DNA from: Ascidiella aspersa
Taxonomy: Eukaryota
DNA: 64,000 nt
Reading direction: 5' to 3'
Assembly (NCBI GenBank): GCA_963924565.1
Contig: OZ004615.1
Span: forward strand, 17,856,001 to 17,920,000
The notes beneath the pieces were generated by a model. That model made no database searches and was not told the origin of the DNA. It saw nothing but the letters and a program-made list of their open reading frames with translations. Both the position numbers and the translations under genes were made by a program. Shown here piece after piece: positions 14,411 through 64,000 of the stretch; positions within the stretch are counted from its first letter, which is position 1, and each line of letters begins with the position of its first letter.

Positions 14411-15760
14411 TACGGCCTCTATTGGAAGTTTCGCTTCTTACAATATAATCTGACGCGGTGCACTGACATACGTAAGCGCTCGTCGGCGTCGAGTCGGAAG
14501 GCGCTTACGACACGAAAACGACGGCGGTGTGCATTCGGCTTTACATTACAATGCACTGTTGATATCTAATCGTTAGTAAGTGAGACAGAAGTGGCTCTAG
14601 GTATATATATATACAGTTTAGTACACACGGTTTAACAACGTTGTGAGCAGCTACGATTTACTCAATTGTCTGGGTGTTCTTGTGAAACACTGTCCCAAAG
14701 TGAAACAAGTAAGTCTGTGACAGTTTTGGAAATTACCGATTTATTCTTGGAAACATACTTTGCGGGAAAACATTCCAAGGCGAATAAACGAGGTTTATTT
14801 AGTTTACAAGCTAGTTCTCGCTATGTCGTACGTGACCCAGCCAACGTAAGCGCGAAGTAACTTGAAGGCAAGTTTCCATGGCCTTTCCGAAATGCAAGGT
14901 TATTCTTGTTTATTGGTCGTTTTCATCCCCCTGGTTAACATTAGCACAAGGCCAGTTTACGTCGGCGTTTTAAAAAAACTTATTATATTCATTGGTTTTT
15001 CGAAATCTCTAAAACTTTCCGACGACAATCAAAGTGTCAATCAAAACTCACCGTTGCTTTGTTGAAAAATCTTTACGGAGTTTTCCTTTGTGATTACCTG
15101 AAACTTTATTGTTCGTTCGCAGCCCACGCAGGTCGCTTACTGCGCCTTTTGTTTTGCCTTGCGTCGCTACAACATTTCTATTTTAAATCCGTTTCGACAC
15201 GATGTAAATAGATCAGCTGGAAACCACCCTGCAATTTCTAACGCTCGAAGGTTGTGGCGTCTGTGGTATATGCCTATCGCACCCAATCTTATCGATGTCG
15301 CCACACGAAGAATCAACATTACGTGAATGGGGATTTTAAAAACTTTTCCCGATTTCGGTCAAAGCTTGAAAGAAAAAGACCGTCGAATGTGTGTAAATTT
15401 GTAGGTATATATTGAATTTCGTGACGAGACAGCACGTGAAATACACGTCGGGCCTGTCATGGATGTAGGTTGATCAAAGCGCATAGCAGTCAGTGGCGGA
15501 CATTAGGTGTAACTGTAGGAAGTTGGACTATAGGTGCAATCGACAGTCATTATTGTTGACAATTACAACTACAGCCACTTGTTAAGTCCCTGTAACATCG
15601 GCCGTTGCTCTAGAAGAGAAAGTGGGCTACAGGCAAAGAGATAAGCGAGTCGAGAAACAACCATACGCTAATACCTGCTACATTCTGTCAGTACAAGCAA
15701 CGACATATTGAAGGGATCACCAGAACCGTATGATTCATTAAAAGACATACACATGTGGGT

Positions 15761-15877
15761 TTAATAACAACTGTGATCTAGCCCCTCGGAAGCTGTTTTT
15801 TGACCAACGATACGAAAGCCATAATCGTTGGTCAAAAAGCAGCTTTTTCCGAGGGGCTAGATGACAGTTGTTATTAA
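15761..15877. repeat. Long inverted repeat (fold-back, ~50-bp arms) ~350 bp upstream of the PLAC8-B ATG
   Basis: TTAATAACAACTGTGATCTAGCCCCTCGGAAGCTGTTTTTGACCAACGAT .. ATCGTTGGTCAAAAAGCAGCTTTTTCCGAGGGGCTAGATGACAGTTGTTATTAA. Copies at 26974-27089, 38447-38586, 49165-49304 and ~60719-60858. Confidence 0.85.
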
Positions 15878-16227
15878 GTGACTTCCCTTCAAGTGAGCGA
15901 CTTCCCTTCATTTATCAAAATAACATTACGTAATTATAACCCGAAGAACTCGAAGCGGAGACCCTGAACACCAATCTTCGTTCACTTAATCCAGCACTTG
16001 ACTGAACTAAAACAATATATGGCTGCTTATTGTCAATCGACAAAATTCGTTTTCAGTTGGTTTTACAACTCGTTAAATGTCTCAGATATTTCTTATTTTG
16101 TGAATAATAAAACTGAGATTCTGTAAGGCCTAATAGTACTACTACGAGACCCAAACAAACTGACGTAAACTCAACGTATGACCACAATTTTTTTGTTTTA
16201 GTTTCACCACTAAAGTTATTGGCGATA

Positions 16228-18000
16228 ATGACAGGACAAGATAAAGACGAGAAGAACACGTGGAAGTATCAATTGTCGGGATGCTTCCGTAACAAAACCT
16301 TATGCATAAAAGCGTTTCTGCTCCCATGTGTATTGGCAGGTAAATAGACGAATGAAAAAATTTGTTAAAAATCACCTTAGATAGTTTGTAGCGTGTTAGA
16401 GCCAACACGCGGTTCGCGGGCCGCATGCGGTCATGTCCAGTTTTATGCGGCTCTTTCGTTCGTTCTGTGTTTGAAATTTATGAGGATGTACAATGTAGGC
16501 TACAGTTCCGACTTCGTTTGCTTAAGTTATTGATTATATTCGGTTCAAACTTATATTGCATGTTATTATATAAAATCAAGTCAATAAATTACAGAAACTT
16601 CGACAGCGTGATGGATTTTTTTTAAGAAGTACTTAAACACCAATGATTCTATTGAATATATTATGTAATACGCAATAGTGTCAGTATGCAGCATTTTACA
16701 ATAATATAACGGAGCAAGAAATGTATGTGTACGCATGGCGGATCTACGGTGCACAATGTCTCTTCGCGAAAACAGTTTTTGCCTATTTTACTACTTGAAT
16801 ATAAACAAACCTCATTTTGCACTTCCATATTGCCGTGGTACCCATTTTTTCTAAATAGAACATTTTGCAAATATAACCCAGCTAAAGCAAATAAGTGTTT
16901 TTTGCGGGCATAGTGGAGTTGTCATTATAATAGGCCCTACTCAATGAAAAATCAGAGATTTTTAATTCCTTGTTCGGATTTGCCCCTTGAATGTACAACA
17001 ATAACTAAAACTAACGTGTGTTGTTTAGGGCAAACTGCTGAAGACACCAACCAGGGTTTCTTCGAGGAATGTTGTTTGGCCGCGCTTTGCTACCCTTGCG
17101 GCTCTTACTGCATGGCGATGACCAGACAGGCAACTAGAACTGAGAAAGGAGTTGAAGTAAACTATTGTTTTTTCCGAGAAAAAAATTAATGTATTCGAAG
17201 GTTAACACAGGGAAAACTTTTGATTCGATCCGATGGATGCTTTACTGTAACAATCCGAATTTGCTTCATTACTTCGGTAAAAATTGAATGAAAAACTTTT
17301 CCAGCTATTGTTTTTTTTAACAAAATATTCCTGGGACGAATACAGAAAAAGCCTTTTTATTATTTATGCTCAAATTAAGACCTATCTTGGATTTGTAAGA
17401 AAACAAATTATTTTTTTTTAACTTTTGTCATCACTATATCCATACGAAATTTATCAAACTTTCTTAGACAAATTCGTGTAAAATGAATTTAAAATTCACA
17501 TAAGCTACAAGCATTTTTCTATTTTCTACCTTCAGGGCACGTTCGCAGATGATTGTCTTGCATCGTTGTGCTGTCCTTGCTGCACTCTTGTACAAATTAG
17601 AATGGTGAGAAATAAATTTATCAGAAGTAGTAGGCTAATATTGAAAGCCAACTTGTGTAACCGATGTCAAGCCACGTTATTTTAACACTATACAAAATAA
17701 ATTTCAGTGTGACTACAAAAATACAGTTATTTTGAATTATTAGCACTAACCACTAACAAATAATAATAATTAAACACCATTGTCAGGTAACGAGGTACTG
17801 CGTAAAATCTGAACTTAACAAAAAAGTTTACAAACACCCAATAATAGCAGTCGGTTGAAGAACGTTTTTTATTTATACATTATATTAAAAGGTACCGTAG
17901 GCTTATTTATAGTTTTACCAAGATGTCATTGCATTCCGGTAATTTTGTTTGTGAATTGCAGGAACTCGAGCACAAAGAACAACGTATTGAGCGAAGTTAA
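16228..18000 (+). CDS. PLAC8: PLAC8-family Cys-rich protein, paralog B, copy 1 (115 aa)
   Basis: Exons 16228-16339, 17029-17156, 17536-17604, 17962-18000, GT..AG, phases 1/0/0; exons 2 and 3 have the same lengths as in paralog A (128 and 69 nt). Protein: MTGQDKDEKNTWKYQLSGCFRNKTLCIKAFLLPCVLAGQTAEDTNQGFFEECCLAALCYPCGSYCMAMTRQATRTEKGVEGTFADDCLASLCCPCCTLVQIRMELEHKEQRIERS*. Family-level symbol. Confidence 0.9.
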
Positions 18001-19610
18001 AGGCCGGGAAAAAATAAGTTCGAAGATGAACTGGTTCTAACATCGTTTTATCCTACTTTGTGGACAAAATAGCACAAATTTATTTATTTTCTGTATCTTA
18101 TTTGACAGATAAATGTGAAGTTTTCCTGCTTTATAGATTAATTTTTATTTGTTTCTTTACCTTCGTCGGGCTGGTTAGTTTTTTCGTGCTGAAACCTTGC
18201 ATGCTATTGTGCTGAAATCTTTCTCATTTTTTCTCTTGTATTTAAGTGCGAAATGCAATGTCGTGTGCACTCTAAATGTTTGTTTTTATGATGATCAGGT
18301 ACGACCAATGGTAAAGGTATATAGGAAAGGTGTGACAGTATAGGCAAGCTTTTGTATATTCTGGACGATATCCAGAGCTATATATAAATCTTTGGAGATT
18401 TGTTTTAGAACCTTTACAAAAAAGTACGTTGATTAACATTGTTTGAACAAGAAGTGACGCTAGTTTACTCAGTAAACAAAATCTTGATATTTATCACCTT
18501 AGCAACTACACTATTTTTGGATGTTTGTTTTTGGCCCAATTATTTTATGTTTGCTGGAAGTTTGGAACGTACCCGGAATAGAAAAATCTGTTTTCCAAAC
18601 ACTTTGGACAAACGACTTGGGATGAAATAAAAGGAATTTTATTTTAGTTTTTATGAAATTGGGTGATTTATTTCAGTTTGTGCACGTAAAAATAATATCT
18701 TACTATTTCGTGTTTTTGTTAAGTTTTAGTCGAGTTATTGCTCATAATCGGATAAGTTTGCCTATTTTAATAGTTTAAAGTTTTATTTTGACGTCAATGA
18801 ACTTGCTCCAATTATGACTACTTATTACTTATTAAATAAAACTTGACTTGAACTTAAGTTATTATACACAGGACTTGACTTAGACGTTATTTCACAAATG
18901 ACTTGGGACTTTAGTCACTTTAAATTGACTTACTTATGACACTGATTACGGTACTATAAACTTAACTTTAAAAGAAAGTTGCCATTAAAATCACTCCAGT
19001 TCGTTTAGTCTTGTACTGCGAATTAGGTAGCGAAATTTTGTTGCTAAAAGTAGTGCTTTGCTTGAAATCCGGGTAACCCACTTTCTTGCAAAACGACATT
19101 AGATTGCAAATTGCTGGCGGTAATAGAACATTGCTATTAATAAAATGTTATTTGGAAAGGTTTTGCTGCTTCAAACGTCTGGGTCTCATTTCGACGCTAG
19201 GCAGATGCATGGCAACAATGAGCTTATTGGAATTTGCCTCAAAGAAAGGTCTTCATTTGCTTAGTTATTAACATTTGTGCACCGTGGATGGATGTGTGTG
19301 CCTTTTAGACAAGAATCCACAATTGCAAGCAACTATCGTTTTTTTTTGCAAACCATCTTCGTTCATGCACCACATTGTAAACCTATAGCGGTAAACTTGC
19401 GACACTAAAAGCAACACAACTTATAGTCTTCTAAGATGAGCGTTCGTAAGTAAAGCCAAATAAAAAAATAAAAATGCTTGGTACAATCGGCAACCATGGC
19501 ACCGAATAAATTCTCTATTAATGGAAACATGTTGCTACACACTTGTATCGATTAGTAATTTCGAAACAAAAACGTTCTTCACTACAGCTGCTAAACAAAA
19601 TGCCCTGTAT

Positions 19611-20223
19611 CAGGGATGGCGAACCTTTTCATCGCGCGGGTTACAAACACGACCTTAATCCTTACAAAATGCTCAAGTGGGTCATGTATTTAGTTATTTG
19701 CTTATTTTATGCGAAACTTTGATGTTGCGTCGTTTCAAGTGTTATCGTCTCGGTTGGTAACCAAGGTTTTCATACGATTTCCAAATTCGGATTCTCACAG
19801 ATATTGAAACCTAAATAGTTAACAAATGCAACAGCAATTTTTATGGGCTTACAGGAATTCAGTTGAAAGCTTTTCAGCATGGTTCATCCAGGATTTTCAG
19901 ATTTTTTTAGTCTGCGAACTCTTACTTTCCAGTTTCTCTTTAAGCTTAAAGGATCGCCACGTTTTACAGCGATAAACAAAATGCGTTTAGTGTCTGCTTT
20001 TTGCACGCATTTGTTGAAAAGCAGTTAACGTACCGTACACCTACTTTTTTTGCACGACCCACAGATGGGCAACCCCGATTTAAACAGTAAGGCTACATAG
20101 CGAAAAACTTATTTTTAAATTTATCATTTCCTGAAAATGATTGATAACTTGTCTGTATTTCTACAGGAACAAGTGGGTCCTTAAAAATCTGTGGTGGGTC
20201 ACAAAAGTGGTTCGCCATCTCTG
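19611..20223. mobile_element. hAT-type MITE, 613 bp (U1)
   Basis: TIRs CAGGGATGGCGAACC / GGTTCGCCATCTCTG; 8-bp TSD CCCTGTAT/CCCTATAT. Empty site in U2 (~30849-30856). Confidence 0.85.
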
Positions 20224-21338
20224 CCCTATATCGAAGAAAATACTCAAGACTGCCACAAGCGACAACTTTTCAGGACACCGGATCTTCTAATAGCAAGAAT
20301 AACAAGTATATAATATTAATAACAGCAAAGGCAATAAATTTTCGAAATATGCAAGCAAGTGCTGTAACTGTACACAAAGTAACGCAACAAACCAAAGCTC
20401 CCGAGAAAGCGAATAAATACAAAAAATGCGACTTAGAAGCGCTCAAAAAGGGCATTTGGGGCTCGTTGCCCGATAGCACCAATACTTGAATGATATTGCA
20501 CGTGTTGCATATCGTCGCGTTACGAAACGCTGTTTAAAGGATATTTCGTGTCTGTAAATAAACAGCACTTGGGGTTAATTTGGGTTGCGCGCTTCCTTTA
20601 GACAAAACACGCAACGCATTTGCAACTGGCGGCAAATCTAAACAATCGTTTGCCACTGAATTCAGTTCCTTAGTAAAAAAGCACCTATACTTTACATGAG
20701 CGTTTGGGTTTGCGACAGTATGGTTTCGTTTTAGTCGAGGGTTAGTCATTTGACTAAGTTTGTAATATTGAACAGTGAGGTGCTTTCATAGATGTACAAC
20801 AATCATTCATATAGCATGCGTAAAGAAAATGTCCAAGCCACGAGCCAATCTAAAAACTATAGGCTCCTGTAGCATATTTATTAAAAGCGATTCTTTTGCC
20901 TTTTTGCTAGGCTTTTTCTTAGTTGGAGGAGTCGTTTAACTTTACTTTATTTTAAACGACTAAAAAAGGTTGTCGGTGAAATATTTCCATCATTTAACTG
21001 TTGATACCCAAGCAAAGTCTTAGGAATTATTCTAATACAAATAGTTAATTCGCATATTATGATTAAATAAAATCTACTTTTAAATTGCAGTAAACCAGTA
21101 ACCACAGGGGCAAATCGTCGCAACTCGCAAGACATATATAACTCGAATTAAATTATGTATAGCGCCTGATCACACGTCTCTGGTATAAACCCTTAGTTGT
21201 CGCATGCCCAAACAAGTGCCTGGTTTAGGCGACCGCATACCACCCGGCAAAATGCTTTACGAAAAATAAACCGTCACTGGGCGGCGTTGGATCTTTCATA
21301 GCTCCGAAATTCGAAGAAAAAAAAACTTGACGCGGCGC

Positions 21339-24337
21339 TCAGATGGCTGTATACCTTCCCATGTACTTCAAGCAGAAGCCCTGTGGCCTGTCGTGCCCAC
21401 TTAAATAGTTTGGTTTCTGCATTTGTTCCAGCAGGCTCATAATCTGGCTGGCGGTCTGTTGCGCTTCGGGGACTTCCTCGCCCGCGTCGAGGCGCGTAGT
21501 TTTGCCCGGGTGGGGCTCGGTGGTGGTTGAGCGCTCGTGGGGACTTTTCCCGGACAGGGGGGCGTTGTCGGGGAGGATGTCGGGCCGTGACACGATACGC
21601 TGTTTGACGTCATCGTCTTCGCTCATGTCTGGCCATTCGGAAGGCGAGGTTTCCGCGGATTCTGCGCGGAAAATGGCGGGTGAAGTTTTGCGTTGCTTTG
21701 ATGAGTTAAAGCAGGGGTTGGCAACCTTTTTGGTCCTGCGGACCGGTTTGAAACTAAAAATTTTCCGCGGGCCGGCTTTAAAAACAACAAATGTTCAATA
21801 AAGGTAACTTATTGCATCTTTTTTTTAATAAACTAATTAAAATGCATGTGCTTGTTTCTAAAACTTTCTTGCCTGAACTTCAAATAATAAATCATTTTGC
21901 AATGCATCTCATATGGCCACAGCACACTTGTTTGTTTTGAACCTCACCAGTGCTTAATAATAATTAAGACTTTTTAGCATACCAATCAACCGTGGAGTAT
22001 GTTTAAACGAAAGTTACGGTGTTTTGAATAGAAAACTACATTTAATTGTTGTTTGCCTTATTTTTAAGTTTCTTGGCATATTGAGTTCAGTTTGGGTTTA
22101 AATAAAATTTTAAATCTGGCAACCCTGCTACGGACCGGTGACGAACTCCTCGCGGACCGGCGGTTGCCGACCACTGAGTTAAAGGATGGCGATAATATTG
22201 GGTCGTATGCGATACCCGACTAGTATTTATGTATGTTCGATAACAAGGTGGTAACTGTATCGATTCGATGCCATGTTGTGCATTTAAGTCATGACTTGCG
22301 ACCCAATGCGTGTACAAACAAATAGTAAAAGCATATTTATAATAAAACTTTTAGAACTTATTGTTGTTCGAAGCGGGTAGGATTCTGTTGTGGAAACACG
22401 TATTAAGTTTTGATTATTTTGTTAGCAGTAATGAAGTTATTTCGATCAGAAGGCCGAATGTTTGGCTCATGATGATATCGCGTATAAGTGTGTTGCACAT
22501 ATTGGAGACATTAGACCTGATAATTCATAATTCGACTTGTGTAGGTTGATAAATTGATACCGATCTGATGTTAGAAATTACGGTTAGAAAAAAAAACAAC
22601 AATATATTTTATACCTTGAAGTGATATGCTGTCGCTGATGAAGTTCGCTCCGGATTGCTTCTGTGGCGTCGAGGATAAATGCTGTTCAGCCTCGCTTTGC
22701 CTTCTTCTCTCTTTCGCGTTGACGAGAGTGCGCACGAGCGTTTGGAGTTTTTCAAGTTTTTGCTGCAAACAAAAAATAAAAGTAGATTAATTAATAAAAC
22801 GTTAAACAACAAAACAACGGTTGCTAACCATTTAAAATTGACACCCTCTTTAAAAACGTAGAGTTGTTAGCGTAAAGCGCCAAAAAGTTTATATTTACAC
22901 AGTAAATGCTGTAAAAACTCGTTATGCGGGACATGGTCTGCTATTTCGATCCAGGACTGGCCCCTGTCCACTGACCTATTTAATAAACCATTTGACTTCA
23001 AAACAGTTCTGTTATCAACTAAACTTGACTTGTGAACTTACACGAGATTTATTGAAAGATTGGAATACAACCCAAACTGTTTTATGTTGCAATAATTCAG
23101 TTTAATAAGATGAAGCCAAACAAACCCGTATGGTGCATACGGTTCGGCTTTTGTTGGATTAAAACGAAATTGAATAGAAGGATTTTTTTGACAGATTTAA
23201 ATCGTTCCTGTGCGACCCACTTGTTTACCCTTCGCGAACCATGTTTAGGCACCACTGTTTTAGGGGAACACTCGTTAAAACCTTCCAGCATTTAATGCGT
23301 AATTTATTTTGCGGTCGCACTAACAGCGGGAACACAAAAAAAGGCCTACAAGGCAGCAATATCTAAGCAGATTAATCTACAATATTAAAGCATTACGACG
23401 ACAAAACCATCTACAATACCGTAGCATTACGAGAAATTGGGTTAGGGTTAAAACTATACATGACCCACCTGCATAACTTCTCGTTCTTGAGCGATGGACG
23501 AAACGTACTCGTCCTTCTCGTGATGACGCTGCTTGAGCAGCTGACGTTGGTTGTGGTAGAGTGTGATTTACTCGCCTGACGGTTGAAAGAAACGAAACAT
23601 TAAACACTTACCACACCATAGATAATGTGCCCTAAAACCGAGAAATCTACTGGTAAAAACACCACGCGCTATTCTGGGTACAATCCCAGTTATATGGACA
23701 AGTTGTGGACATCATTGTATGTGGAATGCCGTACATTTATTCAATTCAGCGATATAAACTTGTTTTATATTTGAGTACCGTGAGAGGAAATTATTAAGAT
23801 GGGTAATCTTAAATCAGTAAGTGTAAAAGTGTTTAAACTGTATACAAGTTATTTGAAACGTTCAGTATTAAAGCATATAATAAGTTTTTTAGAGCACTCG
23901 TACAGCCCACATTGTGTGTGGCTCGCGAACAATACGCACATAACGTTGTATCCCCGGATGCTGACAATCTTGGGACCATCAAGCACTTTATCAAGCGCCT
24001 ATCGTACATGTCGAGTTTCACAGTTTTGTAATGAATCAACGATTCGAATTCTTTTGTGGCCTGCAAAAAGCCGACAAACGTCGCTTTCCTAACGTAAATT
24101 TATTTATATCACACCGACAACGATTCTTCAGGTTCACTCTCCAATCAAACACGCAAGTTGAAAACGTTGGCCATTTCGATCCATGTTGTTGTAGTTGATT
24201 TTTTGCCAGTTTTAAACGCTAGCCGTTATCTTACCGATGGTGTCGCACTCGTTTTGCAGCAGCAAATTGATGTGTTCGAGCTCCTCCACTTTGCTCAGGG
24301 CGTCCACCGTCTCCGTCATTACTTTGGTAAAGCGATC
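21339..24337 (-). pseudogene. GOLGA2: GOLGA2/GM130 3' fragment, unit 1 (disrupted)
   Basis: Minus-strand exons 24337-24235 (DRFTKVMTETVDALSKVEELEHINLLLQNECDTIG), 23575-23469 (E*ITLYHNQRQLLKQRHHEKDEYVSSIAQEREVMQ, TAA at 23570-23568), 22762-22615 (QKLEKLQTLVRTLV...) and 21661-21339 (...TASQIMSLLEQMQKP...GFCLKYMGRYTAI*). These match the GM130 C-terminal motifs I recall (VEELEH..QLSGETDTIGEYIALYQ.QR..LK.RH.EKEEYI, KL.ELQ.LV..LV, TAQQIMQLL). The preceding exon is replaced. Confidence 0.85.
21712..22176. mobile_element. hAT MITE family alpha, 465 bp, in the last GOLGA2 intron (U1)
   Basis: TSD AGTTAAAG (21704-21711, 22177-22184). TIRs CAGGGGTTGGCAACC / GGTTGCCGACCACTG. Confidence 0.88.
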
Positions 24338-24769
24338 CTAGAGCAAAACCAAAAAAAAAATTCATAAACTGACAGGTTTTGTCTATTCTACGGGAAGATT
24401 TGGGATTCATTGAATGAATGCCAGTGACCAAAAATACTTAAGAGTGTGGTGATACTTGGATAGCTTAGTGCCTTTTTATTAACTCAAACACGTCAAATGC
24501 ACGAAGCACGAATTAGAACGCCAAAACTTGCAATTGTCACCCGGCGATATTTCACGCAATAACATTACGATGAAGACTATAGACAAATTAGATACTCCGA
24601 CTGAAGTACCAATTTCTTAGGCACTGTTAAAGTTTTGTCACTGCAAAGAATTGAACAGCAACTAAAAGAGTACCAGTCAATGCTGAATTCTGTATCAGCT
24701 CTACCACGTTAGTAAATATTAAAATAAATCTCTTACCTTCTGCTTGGAGCAAAATTTTAATTGTAATCA

Positions 24770-24949
24770 AACGGACGTTACAAGGTTTGCCACATATATA
24801 TTTCAAATAATTGAGAAGATATTCACATAAAATTTATATATTTTCAAAGACCTAAATCGAACGGACGTTACAGCAATTACCACATATATATTTGAAATGA
24901 TTTCAAAGCTATTCATATAAAATTTATTGGTTTTCAAAGATCTAAATTT
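24770..24949. repeat. Two diverged 90-bp tandem units within the segment replacing a GOLGA2 exon (also in U3, ~46940-47119)
   Basis: AACGGACGTTACA...CACATATATATTT...TTTTCAAAGA.CTAAAT at 24770 and 24860. Confidence 0.7.
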
Positions 24950-26769: not shown

Positions 26770-26825
26770 GCCCGCAGTGAGGTTCGAACCCACGACCTCC
26801 GGTCATAACGGGACCGTTGCTCTAG
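26770..26825 (-). pseudogene. tRNA-like fragment (3' half; tRNA pseudogene or tRNA-derived SINE head)
   Basis: Minus strand reads ...CCGGAGGTCGTGGGTTCGAACCTCACTGCGGGC, with a B-box GGTTCGAACC and a T-arm. No intact 5' acceptor stem or D-arm. Also in U3-U5 (~38238, ~48956, ~60510); deleted in U1. Confidence 0.55.
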
Positions 26826-32200: not shown

Positions 32201-32331
32201 CGGGCCGTGACACGATACGCTGTTTGACGTCATCGTCTTCGCTCATGTCTGGCCATTCGGAAGGCGAGGTTTCCGCGGTTTCTGCGCGGAAAATAGCGGG
32301 TGAAGTTTTGCGTTGCTTTGATGAGTTAAAG

Positions 32332-54603: not shown

Positions 54604-55068
54604 CAGGGGTCGGCAATCTTTTTGGTCCTGCGGACCGGTTTGAAACTAAAAATTTTCCGCGGGCCGGCTTTAAAAACAACAAATGTTCAGTAAAGGTAAC
54701 TTATTGCATCTTTTTTTTAATAAACTAATTAAAATGCATGTGCTTGTTTCTAAAACTTTCTTGCCTGAACGTCAAATAATAAATCATTTTGCAATGCATC
54801 TCATATGGCCACAGCACACTCGTTTGTTTTGAACCTCACCAGTGCTTAATACTAATTAAGACTTTTTATCATACCAATCAACCGTGGAGTATGTTTAAAC
54901 GAAAGTTACTGTGTTTTGAATAGAAAACTACATTTAATTGTTGTTTGCCTTATTTTTAAGTTTCTTGGCATATTGCGTTCAGTTTGGGTTTAAATAAAAT
55001 TTTAAATCTGGCAACCCTGCTACGGACCGGTGACGAACTCCTCGCGGACCGGCGGTTGCCGACCACTG
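54604..55068. mobile_element. hAT MITE family alpha, 465 bp (U4)
   Basis: TSD AGTTAAAG on both sides; TIRs as in U1/U2. Confidence 0.88.
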
Positions 55069-56240
55069 AGTTAAAGGATGGCGATAATATTGGGTCGTAT
55101 GCGATACCCGACTAGTATCTATGTATGTTCGATAACAAGGTGGTAACTGTATCGATTCGATGCCATGTTGTGCATTTAAGTCATGACTTGCGACCCAATG
55201 CGTGTACAAACAAATAGTAAAAGCACATTTATAATAAAACTTTTAGAACTTATTGTTGTTCGAAGCGGGTAGGATTCTGTTGTGGAAACACGTATTAAGT
55301 TTTGATTATTTTGTTAGCAGTAATGAAGTTATTTCGATCAGAAGGCCGAATGTTTGGCTCATGATGATATCGCGTACAAGTGTGTTGCACATATTGGAGA
55401 CATTAGACCTGATAATTCATAATTCGACTTGTGTAGGTTGACAAATTGATACCGATCTGAAGTTAGAAATTACGGTTAGAAAAAAACAACAATATATTTT
55501 ATACCTTGAAGTGATATGCTGTCGCTGATGAAGTTCGCTCCGGATTGCTTCTGTGGCGTCGAGGATAAATGCTGTTCAGCCTCGCTTTGCCTTCTTCTCT
55601 CTTTCGCGTTGACGAGAGTGCGCACGAGCGTTTGAAGTTTTTCAAGTTTTTGCTGCAAACAAAAAATAAAAGTAGATTAATTAATAAAACGTTAAACAAC
55701 AAAACAACGGTTGCTAACCATTTAAAATTGACACCCTCTTTAAAAACGTAGAGTTGTTAGCGTAAAGCGCCAAAAAGTTTATATTTACACAGTAAATGCT
55801 GTAAAAACTAGTTATGCGGGACATGGTCTGCTATTTCGATCCAGGAAACCATTTGACTTCAAAACAGTTCTGTTATCAACTAAACTTGACTTGTGAACTT
55901 CTACGAGATTTATTGAAAGACTTGAATACCGCCCAAACTGTTTTATGTTGCAATAATTCAGTTTAATAAGATGAAGCCAAACAAACCCGTATGGTGCATA
56001 CGGTTCGGCTTTTGTTGGATTAAAACGAAATTGAATAGAAGGATTTTTTTGACAGATTTAAATCGTTCCTGTGCGACCCACTTGTTTACCCTTCGCGAAC
56101 CATGTTTAGGCACCACTGTTTTAGGGAACACTCGATGAAACCTTCCAGCATTTCATGCGTAATTTATTTTGCGGTCGTACTAACAGCGGGAACACAAAAT
56201 AAGACCTACAAGGCAGCAATATCTTAAGCAGATTAATCTA

Positions 56241-56905
56241 CAATACCATAGCATTACGACAACAAAACCATCGACAATACCATAGCATTACGACAACAAA
56301 ACCATCTGCAATACCATAGCATTCCGACGACAAAACCATATGCAATACCATAGCATTCCGACGACAAAACCATCGACAATACCATAGCATTACGACGACA
56401 AAACCATCTGCAATACCATAGCATTACGACGACAAAACCATCGACAATACCATAGCATTCCGACGACAAAACCATCTGCAATACCATAGCATTACGACGA
56501 CAAAACCATCTGCAATACCATAGCATTACGACGACAAAACCATCGACAATACCATAGCATTCCGACGACAAAACCATATGCAATACCATGGCATTACGAC
56601 GACAAAACCATCTGCAATACCATAGCATTACGACGACAAAACCATCGACAATACCATAGCATTCCGACGACAAAACCATCTGCAATACCATAGCATTACG
56701 ACGACAAAACCATCTGCAATACCATAGCATTACGACGACAAAACCATCGACAATACCATAGCATTCCGACGACAAAACCATATGCAATACCATGGCATTA
56801 CGACGACAAAACCATCTGCAATACCATGGCATTACGACGACAAAACCATCTGCAATACCATAGCATTACGACGACAAAACCATCTGCGATACAATAGCAT
56901 TACGA
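56241..56905. repeat. 34-bp minisatellite, ~19.6 copies (U4)
   Basis: Same length and variant order as the U2 array. Confidence 0.95.
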
Positions 56906-59900
56906 GAAATTGGGTTAGGGTTAAAACTATACATGACCCACCTGCATAACTTCTCGTTCTTGAGCGATGAACGAAACGTACTCGTCCTTCTCGTGATGAC
57001 GCTGCTTGAGCAGCTGACGTTGGTTGTGGTAAAATGTGATGTACTCGCCTGACGGTTGAAAGAAACGAAACATTAAACACTTACCACACCATAGATAATG
57101 TGTCCTAAAACCAAGAAATCTACTGGAAAATCTACTGGTAAAAACATCACGCGCTATTCTGGGTACAATCCCAGTTATATGGACAAGTTGTGGACATCAT
57201 TGTATGTGAAATGCCGTACATTTATTCAATTCAGCGATATAAACTTGTTTTATATTTGAGTACCTTGAGAGGAAATTATTGAGATGGGTAATCTTAAATT
57301 AGTAAGTGTAAAAGTGTTTAAACTGTATGCAATTTATTTGAAACGTTCAGTATTAAGGCATATAATAAGTTTTTTAGAGCACTCGTACAGCCCACATTGA
57401 GTGTGGCCCGCGAACAATACGCACATAACGTTGTATCCCCGGATGCTGACAATCTTGGGACCATCAAGCACTTTATCAAGCGCCTATCGTACATGTCGAG
57501 TTTCACAGTTTTGTATTGAATCAACGATTCGAATTCTTTTGTGGGCTGCAAAAAGCCGACAAAAGTCGCTTTCCTAACGTAAATTTATTTATATCACACC
57601 GACAACGATTCTGTAAGTTCACTCTCCAATCAAACACGCAAGTTAAAAACGTTGCCCATTTCGATCCATGTTGTTGTAGTTGAATTTTTGCCAGTTTTAA
57701 ACGCTAGCCGTTATCTTACCGATGGTGTCGCACTCGTTTTGCAGCTGCAAATTGATGTGTTCGAGCTCCTCCACTTTGCTTAGGGCGTCCACCTTCTCCG
57801 TCATTACTTTAGTAAAGCGATCCTAGAGCAAAAGCAAAAAATTTTCATAAACTGACAGGTTTTGTCTATTCTATGAGAAGATTTGGGATTCATTGAATGA
57901 ATGCCAGTGACCAAAAATACTTAAAGTGTGGTGATACTTGGACAGCTTAGTGCCTTTTTATTAATTCAAACACGTCAAATGCACGAAGCACGAATTAGAA
58001 CGCAAAAACTTGCAATTGTCACCCGGCGATATTTCACGCAATAACATTACGATGAAGGCTATAGACAAATTAGATTCGACTGAAGTACCAATTTCTTAGG
58101 CGCTGTTAAAGTTTTGTCACTGCAAAGAATTGAACAGCAACTAAAAGAGTACCAGTCAATGCTGAATTCTGTATCAGCTCTACCACGTTAGTAAATATTA
58201 AAATAAATCTCAACAGTATAAACGCAATGGCCAACAAAATAGCAAAAAGTTAAAAATAATTGTTTTACTACAGCGATTTCTAGACACTTAAATTAAGCTG
58301 CTCATAAAATAAATTTAAAAAGATTTTCGAAAATCATAGTTTTTCTTCAATCAAATCAAATCAAAGCCATTTAAATATTTGAAGACTTAGTGAAACCTTA
58401 CGTTACAATAATTAGCAACTCGAAGAGCTATTGGAGTATATTTGCTAACTGGCTGAATCAAATATCTCGAGAAAAACCCACCTGAAGCAAGGACATGTTC
58501 TTGACCAACGACTCGTGTTCTTCCATTGACACTTCCAGGTCCGGCGAAGGCCGGCTCTCGTTGTTTGCGGATTCCTGCAATGCGGAGGACCTCTCCAGCT
58601 CTGTCTTCTGCTGTTCCAACCTCCGGACGAAGATCGACTTTTCCTCCTGGAGGTCAGCGATCGAGCGGTTCAACTGAGACACCTGGTGGTAAAATAATCA
58701 AAAATAGTGGTTTGGTGTGTTGCGTAAACATTAAAATTGTAGCTATTTTGGGTTAAGTAATACTACAAGGCTTACATAATCCATATAATCGTGGTCCAAC
58801 TATGTTTAGTAGGGCGGGTCGCGAAAACACTTTTTTTTCAAATCCACCTGCCTCATATGGATTTTGATAGATAGACACCTAAAACCGTTGTATACGAAGT
58901 TTAAGCTCATTTGAACATGTATTGGTGTGAGGAAATCGAGATGAATTTTTGCCAAAAATCGCAAAATCGGGTAAAAATGCGAAAATTTAGGTTATGTTTA
59001 ATCCATATTTTTTACTTGAAATTCATTTGCTATGACCTTATTCTTGTTTTTTAGACAGTTATGGAATATTTGAAGCAAGGTAGATCTGCAGAGATTACAT
59101 TTTAATATTTATTTGCAGTAGTATTAAAAATTGGATTTTTGCAGAAAATCGCAAAATTTATAAAAAGGCAAAATTTTGGATTGCCTGCAAACTGTAGTTT
59201 TCAAATCAAACATGACTTTAAATTAATGTACGATTTACTCAATTGTCTGACCCCCTTCTTGCGAAACACTGTCCCAAAGTGAAACAAGTAAGTCTGTGAC
59301 AGTTTTGGAAATTACCGACTTATTCTTGGAAACATACTTTACGGGGAAACATAACAAGGCGAATAAACGAGGTTTATTTAGTTTACAAGCTAGTTCTCGC
59401 TATGTCGTACGTGACCCAGCCAACGTAAGCGCGAAGTAACTTGAAGGCAATTTTCCATGGCCTTTTCGAAATGCCACAGGTTCTTTTTTGTTTGTCGGTC
59501 GTTTTCATCCCCCTGGTTAACAACAGCACAAGGCCAGTTTATATCAGCGCTTTGAACGAAACTAAATATATCCATTGGTTTTTCGGATTCTTTAAAACTT
59601 TCCGACGACAATCCGAGTGTCAATCAAAACTCACCGTTGCTTTGTTGAAAAATCTTTACGGAGTTTTCCTTTGTGATTACCTGAAACTTTTTTGTTTGTT
59701 CGTAGCCCGCAGATCGCTTACTGCGCCTTTTGTTTTGCCTTGCGTCTCTACAACAGTAATATCTATTTTAAAATTGGTTTCGACACAATGTAAACAGAGC
59801 AGCTGGAAACCACCCTGCAATTTCTAACGCTCGAAGGTTGTGGCGTTTGTTGTATTTGGCTATAGAACCCAATCTTATCGATGTCGCCACACGAAGAATC

Positions 59901-61194
59901 AACATTACGTGAATAGGGCTTTTTTTTTAATTTTTCTCGATTTCAAGCTTCAAAGAAAAATACCGTCGAATGTATGTAAATTTGTAGGTATATATATATG
60001 GGAAATGTTTTTTAAAACGAGACTCTATTGAATTTCGTGACGAGACAGCACGTGAAATACACGTCGGGCCTGTCATGGATGTAGGTTAATCGGCAAAGCG
60101 CATAGCAGTCAGTGGCGGACATTAGGTGTAACTGTTGGAAGTTGGACTATAGGTGCAATCAACAGTCATTATCGTTGACAATTAATTACAACTACAGCCA
60201 CTTGTTAAGTCCCTTTAACATCGGCTCCGACAGATTTGGAATTCATAGCTAATATAATTGGCCCAAATGACTATTTTAAGATTTCTGTGTGATACAATAG
60301 TAGCAGCTTTCAAAAGCTATAGATTAGCAAAACGTCGTCATAAAACAGGTAACCGCGTTACTGAGATTTAGGTTTTTAATCTGATCTAAACAATATTTCT
60401 TCTGAGTTTTAGTCAGCCTAAGCGTATTTGAAATTAAGTGTAACAATGGGAAATACTCACCGAATCTGTCGATCAATGATGCAAGCAAGGCAGGCCAGAA
60501 AAACAAGCAGCCCGCAGTGAGGTTCGAGCCCACGACCTCCGGTCATACAGGACCTTTGGTCATACCGGGCCGTTGCTCTAGAAAAGAGTGAGTTATACAC
60601 CGGCATAGAGAGGAGCGAGTCGAGAAACAACCATACGCCAATACCTGCTGCATTCTGTTAGTACAAGCAACTTCATATTGAAGGGAATCAACAGTACCGT
60701 ATCATTCAATAAAAGGCACACACATGTGGGTTTAATAACAACTGTGATCTAGCCCCTCAGAAGCTGTTTTTTGACCAACGATACGGAAGCCATTATCGTT
60801 TGTCAAAAAGCAGCTTACGAAGGGCTAGATCACAGTTGTTATTAAACACATATGTGTGAGTGTCTTAATTCCCTTCATTTATCAAAATAGCATTACTTAA
60901 TTATAACCAGAAGAACTCAAAACGGAGACCCTGAATACAAAACTTCGTTCACTTAATCCAGCACTTGACTGAACTAAAACAATATAGGGCTGCTTATTGT
61001 CAATCGACAAAATTCGTTTTCGGTTGGTTTTACAATTCGTTAAATGTCTCAGATATTTCTTATTTTGTGTATAATAAAACTAAGATTCTGTTAGGCTTAA
61101 TAGTACTACTACGAGACCCAAACAAACTGACGCAAACTCAGCGTATGACCACAATTTTTTTGTTTTAGTTTCACCATTATAGTTATTGGCGATA

Positions 61195-62931
61195 ATGACA
61201 GGACAAGATAAAGACGAGAAGAACACGTGGAAATATCAATTGTCGGGATGCTTCCGTAACAAAACCCTCTGCATAAAAGCCTTTCTGCTCCCATGTGTAT
61301 TGGCAGGTGAATAGACGAATAAGAAAGTTTGTTAAAAGTCACCTTAAATAGTTTATAGCCCGCAGACCAGTAGAGCCAACACGCGGTTCGAGGGCCGCAT
61401 GCCGTCATGGTCCAGTTTTTTGCGGCTCTTTCGTTCGTTCTGTGTTTGAGATTTCTTAGGATGTACAATGTAGGCTACAGTTCCAACTTCTTTTGCTTAA
61501 GTTATTGATTATATTGTCGGTTCAAACTTATATTGTATGTTACTATATAAAATCAAGTCAATAAATTTTAGAAACTTCGACAGCGTGATGTTTTTTTTTA
61601 AGAAGTACTTAAACACCAATGATTCTATTGAATATATTATGTAATACGCAATAGTGTTAGTATGCAGCATCTACGGTGCATAATGTCTCTTCGCGAAAAC
61701 AGTTTTTGCCTATTTTACTACTTGAATATAAACAAACCTCATTTTGCACTTCCATATTGCCGTGGTACCCATTTTTTCTAAATAGAATATTTTTGCAAAT
61801 TTAACCCAGGTAAAGCAAATAAGTGTTTTTTGCGGGCATAGTGGAGTTGTCATTATAATAGGCCCTACTCAATGAAAAATCAGAGATTTTTAATTCCTTG
61901 TAAGGATTTGCCCCTTGAATGTACAACAATAACTAAAACTAACGTGTGTTGTTTAGGGCAAACTGCTGAAGACACCAACCAGGGTTTCTTCGAGGAATGT
62001 TGTTTGGCCGCGCTTTGCTACCCTTGCGGCTCTTACTGCATGGCGATGACCAGACAGGCAACTAGAACTGAGAAAGGAATTGAAGTAAACTATTAATTTT
62101 TCCGAGAAAAAAAAATTAGTGTATTCGAAGGTTTTTAGTGTATACAGGGAAAACTTTTGATTCGATCCAAAGAATGTTTTACTGTAACAATCCGAATTTG
62201 CTTCACTACTTCGGTGAAAATTTAATGAATAACTTTTCCAGCTATTGTTTTCTTAACGAAATATTTATGGGGCAAATACTAAAAAAGCCTTTTTAATATT
62301 TATGCTCAAATTAAGACCTATCTTGGATTTGTAAGAAAAAAAAAATATTTTTTTTAACTTTTGTCATCACTATATCCATACGAAATTTATCAAACTTTCT
62401 TAGACAAATTCGTGTAAAATGAATTTAAAATTCACATAAGCTACAAGCATTTTTCTATTTTCTACCTTCAGGGCACGTTCGCAGATGATTGTCTTGCATC
62501 GTTGTGCTGTCCTTGCTGCACTCTTGTACAAATTAGAATGGTGAGAAATAAATGCATCAGAAGTAGTAATATTAAAAACCAACTTGTGTAACCGATGTCA
62601 AGCCACGTTATTTCAACACTATACAAAATAAATTTAAGTGTGACAACAAAAATACAGTTATTTTGAATTATTAGCACTAACCACTAATAAATAATAATAA
62701 TTAAACACCATTGTCAGGTAACGAGGTACTGCGTAAAATCTGAACTTAACCAAAAAGTTTACAAATACCCAATAATAGTAGTCGGTTGAAGAACTTTTTT
62801 TATTTATACATTATATTAAAAGTTACCGTAGGCTTATTTATAGATTTACCAAGATGTCATTGTAATCCATTAATTTTGTTTGTGAATTACAGGAACTCGA
62901 GCACAAAGAACAACGTATTGAGCGAAGTTAA
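61195..62931 (+). CDS. PLAC8: PLAC8-family paralog B, copy 5 (115 aa)
   Basis: Exons 61195-61306, 61957-62084, 62472-62540, 62893-62931. Intact. Confidence 0.9.
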
Positions 62932-63939
62932 AGGCCGGGAAAAATGAGTTCGTAGATGATCTGGTTTTAAGATCGTTTTACCCTACTTTGTAGAAATGCC
63001 ACGAATTTATTTATTTTCTCTAGCTTCTTTAACAGACAAGTGTGAAGTTTTCTTGTTTTATAGATTAATTTTTATTTGTTTCTTTACCTTCGCCGAGCTG
63101 GTTAGTTTTTTTTCGTACTGAAACCTTGCATGCTATTGTGCTGAAATCTTTCCCATTTTTTCTCTTGTATTTAAGTGCGAAATGCAATGTCGTGTGCACT
63201 CTAAATGTTTGTTTTTTATGATGATCAGGTACGACCAATGGTAAAGGTATATAGGAAAGGTGTGACAGTATAGGCAAGCTTTCCTATATTCTGGACGTTA
63301 TCCAGAACTATATATAAATCTTTGGAGATTTGTTTCAGAACCGTTACAAAAAAGTACGTTGATTAAGATTGTTTGAACAAGAGGTAACGCTAGTTTGCTC
63401 AGTAAACAAAATTAAATAAAACTCAACTTGAACTTTAGTTATTTTACATAGGATTAGGTGTTATTCCGCGAAATTTCGTTGGCTAAAAGTAGTGCTTGGC
63501 TTGGAATCCGGGTAGCCCACTTTCTTGCAAAACAACAATAGATTGCAAATTACTGGCGTTAATAGAACATTGCTATTAATAAAATGTTATTTGGAAAGGT
63601 TTTGCTGCTTCAAACGTCTGGGTCTCATTTCGACGCTAGGCAGATGAATGGCAACAATGACCTTATTGGAATTTGCCTCAAAGAAAGGTCTTCATTTGCT
63701 TAGTTATTAACATTTGTGCACCGTGGATGGATGTGTGTGCCTTTTATGCAAGAATCCACAATTGCAAGCAACTATCGTTTTTTTTGGCAAACCATCTTCG
63801 TTCATGCACCACATTGTAAACCTATAGCGGTAAACTTGCGACACTAAAAGCAACACAACTTATAGTCTTCTAAGATGAGCGTTGTAATTTCAAAACAAAA
63901 ACGTTCTTCACTACAGCTGCTAAACAAAATGCCCTGTAT

Positions 63940-64000
63940 CAGGGATGGCGAACCTTTTCATCGCGCGAGTACAAACACAACCTTAATCCTTACAAAATGC
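63940..64000. mobile_element. Left end of hAT-type MITE (U5 copy of 19611-20223), truncated by the window
   Basis: CCCTGTAT followed by CAGGGATGGCGAACC. Confidence 0.8.

What the first reader, a model, noticed from the sequence alone, without database searches (positions are those of the whole stretch)
14652..64000. A PLAC8 + GOLGA2-tail duplicon: recent tandem amplification built on a GM130 fragment
Seen: at least 4.4 head-to-tail units, each with one complete PLAC8-B gene and, where the unit is complete, the convergent last exons of GOLGA2/GM130. The unit junction falls inside a GOLGA2 intron. Inference: the ancestral locus was PLAC8-A > PLAC8-B > < GOLGA2, and the intact GOLGA2 5' end should lie to the right of the array, joined to the last unit. 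Known: in primates, GOLGA2-derived GOLGA6/GOLGA8 core duplicons mark unstable segmental duplications on chromosome 15. An independent invertebrate amplification that also carries GOLGA2 sequence would be a notable parallel, though it may simply reflect gene adjacency.
Basis: partly seen in the sequence, partly recalled or inferred. Interest (0 to 1): 0.8.

Follow-up and report, generated by a model that had tools for sequence, protein, structure and literature searches.

The report
Seven-copy PLAC8 and GM130-tail tandem array
An 11-kb stretch holding one small PLAC8 gene and the last five exons of the neighbouring Golgi gene GM130 is repeated seven times head to tail, an ordinary local gene amplification whose joints all carry one arm of a transposon.

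Summary
The window has 4.4 head-to-tail units of about 11 kb starting at 14652. With the fetched flank, the array has seven units and spans window 14652-93813 (79 kb).

Each unit carries:
- a complete four-exon PLAC8-B gene of 115 codons, intact in 7 of 7 units;
- on the other strand, the last five coding exons (293 codons) of GM130/GOLGA2. Two of these exons pass the Pfam GOLGA2L5 cut-off on their own.

New here:
- All six internal joints are identical. Each is bridged by a 410-nt single arm of a TA-flanked foldback DNA transposon that is absent from both outer edges. This points to one founding event followed by unequal crossing-over.
- Unit similarity is mosaic, with a 22-kb higher-order repeat at 99.3%.
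- The edge units are 8-12% diverged, so only the last expansions are recent.

The primate core-duplicon parallel is superficial, because these copies are strictly local and tandem.

Copy number therefore rests on the assembly alone. The scan noted this stretch before (s1-802113).

The parts
4255..9458 (+). PLAC8-A, the single-copy paralogue left of the array. Exons are about 4255-4342, 4766-4893, 6674-6742 and 9411-9458.
   Evidence: Exon 1 matches PF04749 at 39.9 bits against a cut-off of 34.4. Exons 1 and 2 are 45-46% identical to PLAC8-B. Exon 3 was found by local tblastn. Exon 4 and the splice sites were read.
12810..14651 (.). Single-copy left flank of the array, with no transposon arm at the edge.
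   Evidence: A whole-genome DNA search matched only itself from 12810 on; an interspersed repeat lies at 12099-12809. No match better than E 0.03 to the junction element in the last 1 kb.
14652..25503 (+). Unit 1 with its trailing transposon arm. Its first 950 nt are the most diverged in the array, 88-90% identical to the other units.
25504..36956 (+). Unit 2 with its trailing transposon arm.
36957..47674 (+). Unit 3 with its trailing transposon arm.
47675..59228 (+). Unit 4 with its trailing transposon arm.
59229..64000 (+). First 4.8 kb of unit 5. The unit continues to window 70389. U6 is 70390-81883 and U7 is 81884-93813, both outside the window.
16228..18000 (+). PLAC8-B copy of U1: exons 16228-16339, 17029-17156, 17536-17604, 17962-18000. 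It has one private change, I>V.
27440..29231 (+). PLAC8-B copy of U2: exons 27440-27551, 28250-28377, 28757-28825, 29193-29231.
38923..40659 (+). PLAC8-B copy of U3: exons 38923-39034, 39686-39813, 40200-40268, 40621-40659; 115 codons.
   Evidence: Splice sites were read. Exon 1 scores 16.4 bits and exon 3 scores 20.3 bits against PF04749, at profile positions 1-25 and 79-97; each is below the 34.4 cut-off.
49641..51398 (+). PLAC8-B copy of U4.
61195..62931 (+). PLAC8-B copy of U5.
21339..24337 (-). GOLGA2 tail copy of U1. Exons e 21339-21661, d 22615-22762, c 23469-23575 (with an in-frame TAA) and b 24235-24337. Exon a is deleted.
31959..36410 (-). GOLGA2 tail copy of U2. Exons a 36210-36410, b 35448-35550, c 34670-34776, d 33233-33380, e 31959-32281. 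All are open, 293 codons ending in YTAI and a stop.
   Evidence: PF15070 scores 47.5 bits (c) and 32.9 bits (b). GM130_C scores 15.6 bits against a cut-off of 23.5 in exon e.
43257..46507 (-). GOLGA2 tail copy of U3. Exon a is deleted and exon c has a TAA, as in U1.
54231..58682 (-). GOLGA2 tail copy of U4. All five exons are open.
25094..25503 (+). Junction filler U1/U2: a single arm of a foldback DNA transposon.
36547..36956 (+). Junction filler U2/U3: a 410-nt arm that starts at the element's outer terminus (TA|GGGCGGGTCGCG) and is cut off inside the element.
   Evidence: Sequence read. Aligned with 12 genomic copies that continue past the cut. Whole elements are near-perfect inverted repeats with TA at both ends.
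47265..47674 (+). Junction filler U3/U4. The start is good to about 1 nt.
58819..59228 (+). Junction filler U4/U5.
33964..34633 (.). 34-bp minisatellite in the GOLGA2 intron between exons d and c, 19.7 copies here. The same array lies at 45376-45603 (6.7 copies) and 56236-56905 (19.7 copies).

Best explanation
This is a local tandem gene amplification.

Founding event. One segmental duplication copied an 11-kb segment. Its left breakpoint lay 1.6 kb upstream of the PLAC8-B start codon. Its right breakpoint lay in a GOLGA2 intron, 131-136 nt upstream of the fifth-from-last coding exon. The new joint was not blunt. It was bridged by 410 nt copied from, or left by, one arm of a TA-flanked foldback DNA transposon. 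That arm begins exactly at the element's terminus and shares a GGCGGG stretch with the right-hand breakpoint (shown). I take this to mean a replication or repair template switch, or a break in a resident palindromic element (inferred).

Expansion. Because all six internal joints are the same, every later unit descends from that one joint. Expansion to seven units went by unequal crossing-over and conversion between units. This accounts for the mosaic similarity, the 22-kb two-unit repeat at 99.3% and the more diverged outer ends (pattern shown, process inferred).

The two genes. The working GM130/GOLGA2 gene is the single set of 5' exons right of the array plus the tail of the last unit. The six other tails have no promoter or 5' exons and are passengers. 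PLAC8-B is the only complete gene in the unit, is intact in all seven copies and looks constrained. The likely effect, and perhaps the reason the array is kept, is higher PLAC8-B dosage (inferred; no RNA evidence).
For: Array and junctions:
- Seven units, six identical junctions. The 34-nt junction string occurs 6 times in the 308.6-Mb genome (5 exact, 1 with 2 mismatches), all inside the array, and 0 times for the reversed control.
- Unit bounds.
- The filler is one arm of a foldback element. Twelve of 12 fetched genomic copies align over it. Eleven of these continue in a shared element sequence where the array switches to the unit start; the twelfth (L020) turns back into the inverted arm there.
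- Four of 4 whole elements are long inverted repeats.
- TA was read on both sides of 1 whole element, on the one end found in 2 more, and no end was found in the fourth. TA precedes the terminus in 11 of the 12 fetched copies; L012 starts inside the arm.
- There is no element in either outer 1-kb flank; the best chance match has E 0.03.
- GGCGGG is shared by the right edge and the arm's terminus.

Expansion history:
- Mosaic nearest neighbours: U3=U5 on the left halves and U2=U4 on the right halves at 99.6-100%; U1 is nearest U3 on the right halves at 98.2-99.3%.
- Window 30847-42000 matches 53125-64270 at 99.3%.

GOLGA2:
- PF15070 hits at or above the cut-off occur only at this locus: 13 of 17 listed matches, all on C9 between 17.879 and 17.953 Mb.
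- The 5' exon at window 96311-96541 scores 69.5 bits.

PLAC8-B:
- 7 of 7 copies are intact. There are 11 variable sites in the 309 nt of exons 1-3; 4 change the protein and 7 are silent, giving pN/pS 0.15. Exon 4 is identical in 7 of 7 copies.

Other content of the unit:
- No Rfam family or tRNA in window 28760-39810.
- No Pfam family for the two longest other ORFs tested, out of 48 ORFs of 50 aa or more listed over 30800-42500.
Against: - The exact-sequence look-up found none of the 5 distinct tail ORFs. Copy number and the 99.3% two-unit repeat therefore rest on one assembly.
- PLAC8-B expression is untested.
- The selection contrast is weak. PLAC8-B has 4 changing and 7 silent differences, the GOLGA2 tails 28 and 17; Fisher p = 0.18.
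- The passenger tails look better kept than simple decay predicts. There are 0 indel blocks in 681 coding columns, against 157 in 11,600 non-coding columns. Exon variability is 5.0% against 7-25% in the introns.
- PLAC8-B exons searched singly stay below the Pfam cut-off.
- The origin of the filler (template switch or resident element) cannot be settled without an outgroup.
Confidence: 0.72

Rival explanations
1. Assembly artefact. Haplotypes or collapsed reads were stacked in tandem, and the true locus has one or two copies, or two fewer than assembled.
For: No read check was possible. The youngest repeat, 11 kb at 99.3% and 22.3 kb apart, is within the range of allelic difference in many marine animals. 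Only the share of 31-letter words held by other runs is known: 0.81 and 0.68 for two runs of the same organism.
Against: The seven units are all different (92.4-98.2% overall). They have private deletions, different minisatellite lengths (none found, 19.7, 6.7, 19.7, 2.7, 17.7 and 39.7 copies) and a mosaic pattern that two haplotypes cannot give. There are no gaps in 144 kb. No extra copy sits on any of the other 74 contigs.
Confidence: 0.08
2. A true GOLGA-type core duplicon. On this reading GOLGA2 sequence itself drives the instability, in convergence with primate GOLGA6/GOLGA8.
For: The unit carries GOLGA2 exons. Its size of 11 kb is near the roughly 14 kb of the primate core (passage in PMC6436712).
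Against: All copies are tandem at one locus and none is dispersed. The GOLGA2 piece is a 3' fragment, and the breakpoint falls in an intron at a transposon arm rather than in GOLGA2 coding sequence. Earlier notes of this scan list several other recent 9.5-14 kb tandem duplications in the same genome with unrelated genes (unchecked notes).
Confidence: 0.04
3. Transposase-made duplication, by alternative (reversed-ends type) transposition using the ends of nearby elements, as shown for maize Ac/Ds.
For: The arm at each joint starts exactly at the element's terminus and is preceded by TA, the flank seen at other copies. The mechanism is documented (PMC3744419: abstract and section 10 read).
Against: That model predicts an element at the head of every duplicated segment, the outer one included. 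Here there are six arms for seven units and none at either outer edge. The inner end of the arm is a cut inside the element, not a terminus.
Confidence: 0.1
4. The interior GOLGA2 tails are in use, either as alternative 3' cassettes of GM130 or as a store that unequal exchange moves into the working position.
For: Four of the 6 extra tails keep all five exons and splice sites. There are no indels in 681 coding columns, where about 9 would be expected from the non-coding rate. The tails differ at 12 nucleotide positions that change the protein in the last exon.
Against: Two of the 6 are dead, with exon a lost and a TAA in exon c. pN/pS is 0.45, higher than PLAC8-B's 0.15. Using an interior tail would need splicing across 11 kb or more and through an antisense PLAC8-B. 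Conversion from the selected last copy explains the same pattern.
Confidence: 0.06

Closest known systems
Primate GOLGA6/GOLGA8 core duplicons (chromosome 15)
   Same: The duplicated DNA is derived from GM130/GOLGA2. The unit is of similar size: 11 kb here, about 14 kb there. There are multiple copies with high identity.
   Different: The primate cores are dispersed to many sites, partly palindromic, gather other duplications around them, are expressed as gene families and mark rearrangement breakpoints (passages in PMC6920530 and PMC6436712). Here the copies form one head-to-tail array at the parent locus, only the promoterless last five exons are copied, and nothing is dispersed.
Tandem gene amplification by unequal crossing-over (copy-number-variable gene arrays)
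   Same: Head-to-tail units share one junction. There is a higher-order two-unit periodicity. The interior is homogenised and the edge units are diverged. One whole gene per unit is kept intact.
   Different: The right breakpoint cuts a neighbouring single-copy gene, so the array sits directly downstream of the working gene's 3' end, and each interior unit carries a spare tail.
Transposon-associated tandem duplications (maize Ac/Ds reversed-ends transposition; Pack-TIR gap filling in animals)
   Same: A terminal-inverted-repeat DNA transposon sequence sits exactly at the duplication joint and starts at the element's terminus.
   Different: There is no element at the outer edge and no matching target-site pattern, so the maize model's predicted structure is not met. 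For Pack-TIRs only the abstract was read (PMC8277862). In Pack-TIRs host DNA lies inside a transposon; here a transposon piece lies between host copies.
PLAC8 / plant cadmium resistance (PCR) / cornifelin family of small cysteine-rich proteins
   Same: The N-terminal and C-terminal cysteine motifs are in the family's order. The exon structure is shared with two neighbouring paralogues, one of which passes the Pfam cut-off.
   Different: PLAC8-B exons scanned singly score 16.4 and 20.3 bits, below 34.4. Its function in this animal is unknown. Roles in metal handling are known to me only from the listing and abstract start of a plant review (PMC12467093).

Membership tests
GM130/GOLGA2 (minus-strand exons) | Match to Pfam PF15070 (GOLGA2L5) above the curated cut-off of 29.2 bits | tested here: met
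   Exon c scores 47.5 bits, exon b 32.9 bits and the 5' exon at window 96311-96541 scores 69.5 bits, each searched alone. The genome scan listed 13 of 17 matches over the cut-off.
GM130/GOLGA2 (minus-strand exons) | C-terminal GM130_C binding motif (PF19046, cut-off 23.5 bits) | tested here: inconclusive
   15.6 bits for the U2 copy and 16.3 bits for the U7 copy, E 0.014 and 0.008, matching profile positions 4-22 only.
GM130/GOLGA2 (minus-strand exons) | One gene with co-linear 5' exons on the same strand next to the tail | tested here: met
   Profile positions 62-118 and 115-181 match right of the array, and 420-492 match in the units, all on the minus strand. No other locus reaches the cut-off. 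That the first exon looks like the GM130 N-terminus is my recollection and was not tested.
PLAC8 family (PLAC8-B) | Match to Pfam PF04749 above the curated cut-off of 34.4 bits | tested here: inconclusive
   Exon 1 scores 16.4 bits (profile 1-25) and exon 3 scores 20.3 bits (profile 79-97), searched singly. The joined product was not searched. The paralogue PLAC8-A passes with exon 1 alone at 39.9 bits and is 45-46% identical over exons 1 and 2.
Core duplicon (primate GOLGA type) | Copies interspersed at several distant sites of a chromosome | tested here: not met
   All unit copies lie within C9 17,870,652-17,949,813. The remaining matches cover only the transposon arm.
Core duplicon (primate GOLGA type) | Other duplicated blocks accreted around the core in different combinations | tested here: not met
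   All seven units have the same content and the same junction.
Core duplicon (primate GOLGA type) | Transcribed gene family under positive selection | not testable with these tools
The tails lack 5' exons, and their pN/pS of 0.45 gives no sign of positive selection.
Tandem array grown by unequal crossing-over | An identical novel junction between all neighbouring units | tested here: met
   6 of 6 internal junctions carry the same arm and the same cut point.
Tandem array grown by unequal crossing-over | Mosaic or higher-order similarity between non-adjacent units | tested here: met
   Nearest neighbours change along the unit. There are two-unit repeats at 94.6% and 99.3%.
Tandem array grown by unequal crossing-over | Support from read depth or spanning long reads | not testable with these tools
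Reversed-ends (alternative) transposition duplication | A transposon copy heads every duplicated segment, including the outer one, with the original target-site duplication | tested here: not met
   There is no element within 1 kb of either outer edge. The criteria come from section 10 of PMC3744419.

The most novel reading that the evidence does not exclude
The spare GM130 tails may not be dead passengers. Because the array boundary cuts the gene, unequal exchange could keep moving interior tail exons into the working last position, or they could be spliced as alternative ends. Selection would then be felt by all copies, and the array would act as a store of variant GRASP-binding C-termini. 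On this reading the transposon-arm joint would mark a replication-switch route to such arrays that recurs in this genome.
Probability: 0.08. Interest if true: 0.6.

Novelty: new member of a known kind. Interest (0 to 1): 0.3.

Why it matters
It is a clean worked example of how a tandem amplification starts and grows:
- a single founding joint with a transposon arm as filler;
- later growth by unequal exchange;
- one whole small gene amplified seven-fold;
- a neighbouring single-copy gene cut by the boundary yet left working, because the last unit completes it.

It also corrects an attractive analogy. Carrying GOLGA2 sequence does not make this a counterpart of the primate GOLGA core duplicons.

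For annotation, gene callers may fuse or multiply GM130 models here. The true gene uses the tail of the last unit.

Tried and rejected
Reads. I chose a 6-kb stretch over one junction plus PLAC8-B, with a DNA run, an RNA run, a contig run of the same organism and one of a second organism.

Independent assemblies.
- The exact look-up took the terminal-exon ORFs of all 7 units, which make 5 distinct sequences, and found 0 of 5.
- One exact scan of metagenome contigs for the junction string found 0.

Organism. An earlier agent's note calls it a sea squirt (untested). A marine metagenome shares 18% of the sampled words.

Exon and gene models.
- My first acceptor for the last GOLGA2 exon (32395) was wrong. 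It is not conserved in U3, U6 and U7, and I replaced it with 32281, which is conserved in 7 of 7 units.
- A candidate PLAC8-A third exon at 12947-13015 was rejected (no Pfam hit) in favour of 6674-6742.

Mechanisms for the founding event.
- Homologous recombination between two flanking transposon copies is rejected, because there is no element at either outer edge.
- An excision footprint at the right edge was considered. The GGCGGG there is not followed by the TA a footprint should leave, so this stays open.

Other payloads. There is no Rfam family or tRNA in 28760-39810. PLAC8-B intron 2 was left out of these scans.

Literature. Searches turned up no paper on a PLAC8 plus GOLGA2 tandem array. 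This covers only the held library. Supplements were closed and I did not ask for them.

The big protein search and structure prediction were not used, because the family scans settled the identities.

The joined spliced products of PLAC8-B and of the GOLGA2 tail were not searched. Exons were searched one by one, and the substitution counts were made per exon and then summed.

Full report
WHAT IS THERE.
The window is C9:17,856,001-17,920,000 of a 308.6-Mb assembly in 75 contigs. Self-comparison shows a head-to-tail repeat with a period of 10.7-11.6 kb that begins exactly at 14652 and runs off the right end.

I fetched 60 kb to the right and 20 kb to the left from the same contig. There are no Ns in the joined 144 kb. 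The array has seven units:
- U1 14652-25503
- U2 25504-36956
- U3 36957-47674
- U4 47675-59228
- U5 59229-70389
- U6 70390-81883
- U7 81884-93813

This is 79,162 nt in all. Whole-unit identities are 92.4-98.2%.

GENES IN THE UNIT: PLAC8-B.
On the plus strand each unit has a small gene of four coding exons. In U3 these are 38923-39034, 39686-39813, 40200-40268 and 40621-40659, giving 115 codons with canonical splice sites.

Family evidence:
- Searched singly, exon 1 matches Pfam PLAC8 positions 1-25 (16.4 bits) and exon 3 matches positions 79-97 (20.3 bits). Both are below the 34.4-bit cut-off.
- The paralogue PLAC8-A, left of the array at 4255-9458, has the same exon plan. Its first exon alone scores 39.9 bits. 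It is 45-46% identical to PLAC8-B over exons 1 and 2.
- A third paralogue lies at window -6999 to -5356.

All seven PLAC8-B copies are intact. Of the 309 nt in exons 1-3, 11 sites vary; 4 change the protein and 7 are silent, giving pN/pS 0.15. Exon 4 is identical in 7 of 7 copies.

GENES IN THE UNIT: GOLGA2 TAIL.
On the minus strand each unit has five exons. In U2 they are a 36210-36410, b 35448-35550, c 34670-34776, d 33233-33380 and e 31959-32281.
- Exons b and c alone pass the cut-off of Pfam GOLGA2L5 (32.9 and 47.5 bits against 29.2).
- The GM130_C motif in exon e is below its cut-off (15.6-16.3 bits against 23.5).

THE REST OF GOLGA2.
A six-frame scan of the whole genome with PF15070 listed 17 matches. 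Sixteen lie on C9 between 17.879 and 17.954 Mb. The other is a 19-bit match on C2.
- Profile positions 420-459 and 456-492 occur seven times each, once per unit.
- Positions 62-117 and 114-181 occur once, right of the array at window 97.7-97.9 and 96.3-96.5 kb. The latter scores 69.5 bits when searched alone.
- Further coiled-coil open segments on the same strand run out to about window 105.8 kb. There an exon begins with a methionine and a basic stretch that I recall as GM130-like (recollection, not tested).

The working gene is the single set of 5' exons plus the tail of U7, and the array boundary (93813) lies 131 nt upstream of U7's exon a, inside an intron.

Of the six extra tails:
- U1 and U3 have lost exon a and carry a TAA in exon c.
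- U2, U4, U5 and U6 keep all five exons and their splice sites.

THE JUNCTION.
The two ends of the unit are not joined directly. Between them lies a 410-nt insert (36547-36956 between U2 and U3), and it is present at all six internal junctions. The 34-nt string across its right end occurs six times in the genome, all in the array, and never for the reversed control.

The insert belongs to an interspersed family with more than 40 scored copies.
- I aligned it with 12 fetched copies. All 12 align over the insert. The insert starts at the family's terminus (GGGCGGGTCGCG), which is preceded by TA in 11 of the 12 copies; L012 starts inside the arm.
- Eleven of the 12 copies continue in a shared element sequence where the array turns into the unit start. 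The twelfth (L020) turns back into the inverted arm there.
- Four of 4 whole elements are long inverted repeats of 0.7-2.5 kb. TA was read on both sides of one of them and at the one end found in two more; no end was found in the fourth.

The insert is therefore one arm of a foldback-type, TA-flanked DNA transposon, cut off inside the element.

Neither outer flank of the array holds any of this element; the best match within 1 kb has E 0.03. The right edge reads ...TTTAGTGGCGGG and then unrelated sequence. The junctions read ...TTTAGTAGGGCGGG and then the arm. GGCGGG is thus shared between the breakpoint and the arm's tip.

HOW IT AROSE.
One junction type means one founding duplication. All later units then arose by unequal exchange between units.

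What the junction excludes:
- Six arms for seven units, with none at the edges, does not fit recombination between two flanking elements.
- It also does not fit the structure predicted for reversed-ends transposition in maize, where an element heads every segment (PMC3744419, abstract and section 10 read).

What fits best is a repair or replication switch that copied an arm as filler, using the short shared stretch. The alternative is a break in a resident palindromic element whose remainder was later lost. I cannot tell these apart without an outgroup.

Later history shows in the mosaic:
- On the left halves U3 and U5 are 99.6-100% alike, and U1 pairs with U2.
- On the right halves U2 and U4 are 99.8-100% alike, and U1 pairs with U3, sharing the exon-a deletion.
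- Window 30847-42000 matches 53125-64270 at 99.3%. An older two-unit repeat (23375-29713 against 45546-51879) is 94.6%.
- The first 950 nt of U1 and the last 250-400 nt of U7 are only 88-94% like the other units. This is the usual picture of diverged edges and a homogenised interior.

'Recent' therefore fits the last expansions, not the founding event.

PAYLOAD AND PASSENGER.
PLAC8-B is the only complete gene in the unit.
- No Rfam family or tRNA was found in 28760-39810.
- Of 48 ORFs of 50 aa or more listed over 30800-42500, I scanned six. Only the GOLGA2 and PLAC8 pieces gave family leads.

The contrast between the two genes is suggestive but weak. pN/pS is 0.15 for PLAC8-B and 0.45 for the tails, which also carry one nonsense change; Fisher p = 0.18.

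Against simple decay, the tail exons b-e have no indel block in 681 columns and PLAC8-B has none in 309. The 11,600 non-coding columns have 157, or 13.5 per kb, so about 9 and 4 would be expected. Some non-coding blocks come from unalignable stretches, so these expectations are upper figures. Conversion from the selected last copy, or exchange that moves interior tails into the working position, would explain this. Both are inference.

WHAT I COULD NOT DO.
There is thus no depth, no spanning reads and no RNA.
- A run search had shown two contig runs of the same organism holding 0.81 and 0.68 of the sampled words, a second organism holding 0.28 and a marine metagenome holding 0.18. That shows presence only.
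- The exact look-up found none of the tail ORFs, and a metagenome scan for the junction found nothing.
- The array therefore rests on one gap-free assembly. I think an artefact is unlikely because the seven units differ in private deletions and in minisatellite length (none found, 19.7, 6.7, 19.7, 2.7, 17.7 and 39.7 copies), and because of the mosaic pattern.

COMPARISON WITH WHAT IS KNOWN.
Primate GOLGA core duplicons are about 14-kb GOLGA2-related repeats with nearly 40 copies dispersed along chromosome 15. They are partly palindromic, sit at rearrangement breakpoints and are expressed as GOLGA6/GOLGA8 (passages read in PMC6436712 and PMC6920530). The present array shares only the source gene and the size. 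It is local, tandem and uniform, and it carries a promoterless 3' piece. It is not a core duplicon in that sense.

It is an ordinary tandem gene amplification with a well-preserved founding joint. Earlier unchecked notes of this scan list several other recent 9.5-14 kb tandem duplications in the same genome, one with its joint at a hAT terminus. This lowers the singularity of the finding and hints at a common route. The same stretch was noted before under another title (s1-802113). My counts agree that PLAC8-B stays intact, but they show visible decay in only 2 of the 6 spare tails.

VERDICT.
The structural inferences are supported. The core-duplicon parallel is not supported. This is a new member of a known kind, of modest interest.

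Noticed in passing
window 33964-34633, 45376-45603, 56236-56905; also window 67742-67833, 78964-79565 and 90464-91813 (loci L004-L006): A 34-bp minisatellite in the GOLGA2 intron between exons d and c varies from none found (U1) to 39.7 copies (U7) between units. The longest array sits in the working copy.
   Followed up: partly
window 24765-24947, 46935-47117; also window 69149-69330 (L004): A 90-bp repeat of 2 copies lies just downstream of where GOLGA2 exon a lay and was lost in U1 and U3. U5 has the same repeat but keeps exon a.
   Followed up: no
window -6999 to -5356 (locus L010): A third PLAC8 paralogue lies upstream of PLAC8-A on the same strand, with the same four-exon plan. PLAC8-B was therefore amplified inside an older PLAC8 cluster.
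   Followed up: partly
window 12099-12809 and window 1-127: Two other interspersed repeat families have many genomic copies at 77-100% identity. The second is very young, with many copies at 95-100%.
   Followed up: no
loci L024-L027 (C3:27925860-27927214, C8:14657828-14660498, C6:5338833-5341248, C9:13512804-13513691): The junction element belongs to a family of near-perfect palindromic (foldback) DNA transposons, 0.7-2.5 kb long and TA-flanked. No coding capacity was examined.
   Followed up: partly
window 43580-43830, 77187-77440 and 88668-88920, compared with 32282-32520: Upstream of the last GOLGA2 exon the intron comes in two unalignable versions: U3, U6 and U7 against U1, U2, U4 and U5. 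The split cuts across the similarity groups seen elsewhere in the unit.
   Followed up: no
G000 C6:17643711-17643980, C6:23988148-23988417, C6:12518197-12518466: Three intronless full-length PLAC8 ORFs (75-81 bits) lie elsewhere in the genome. They may be retrocopies.
   Followed up: no
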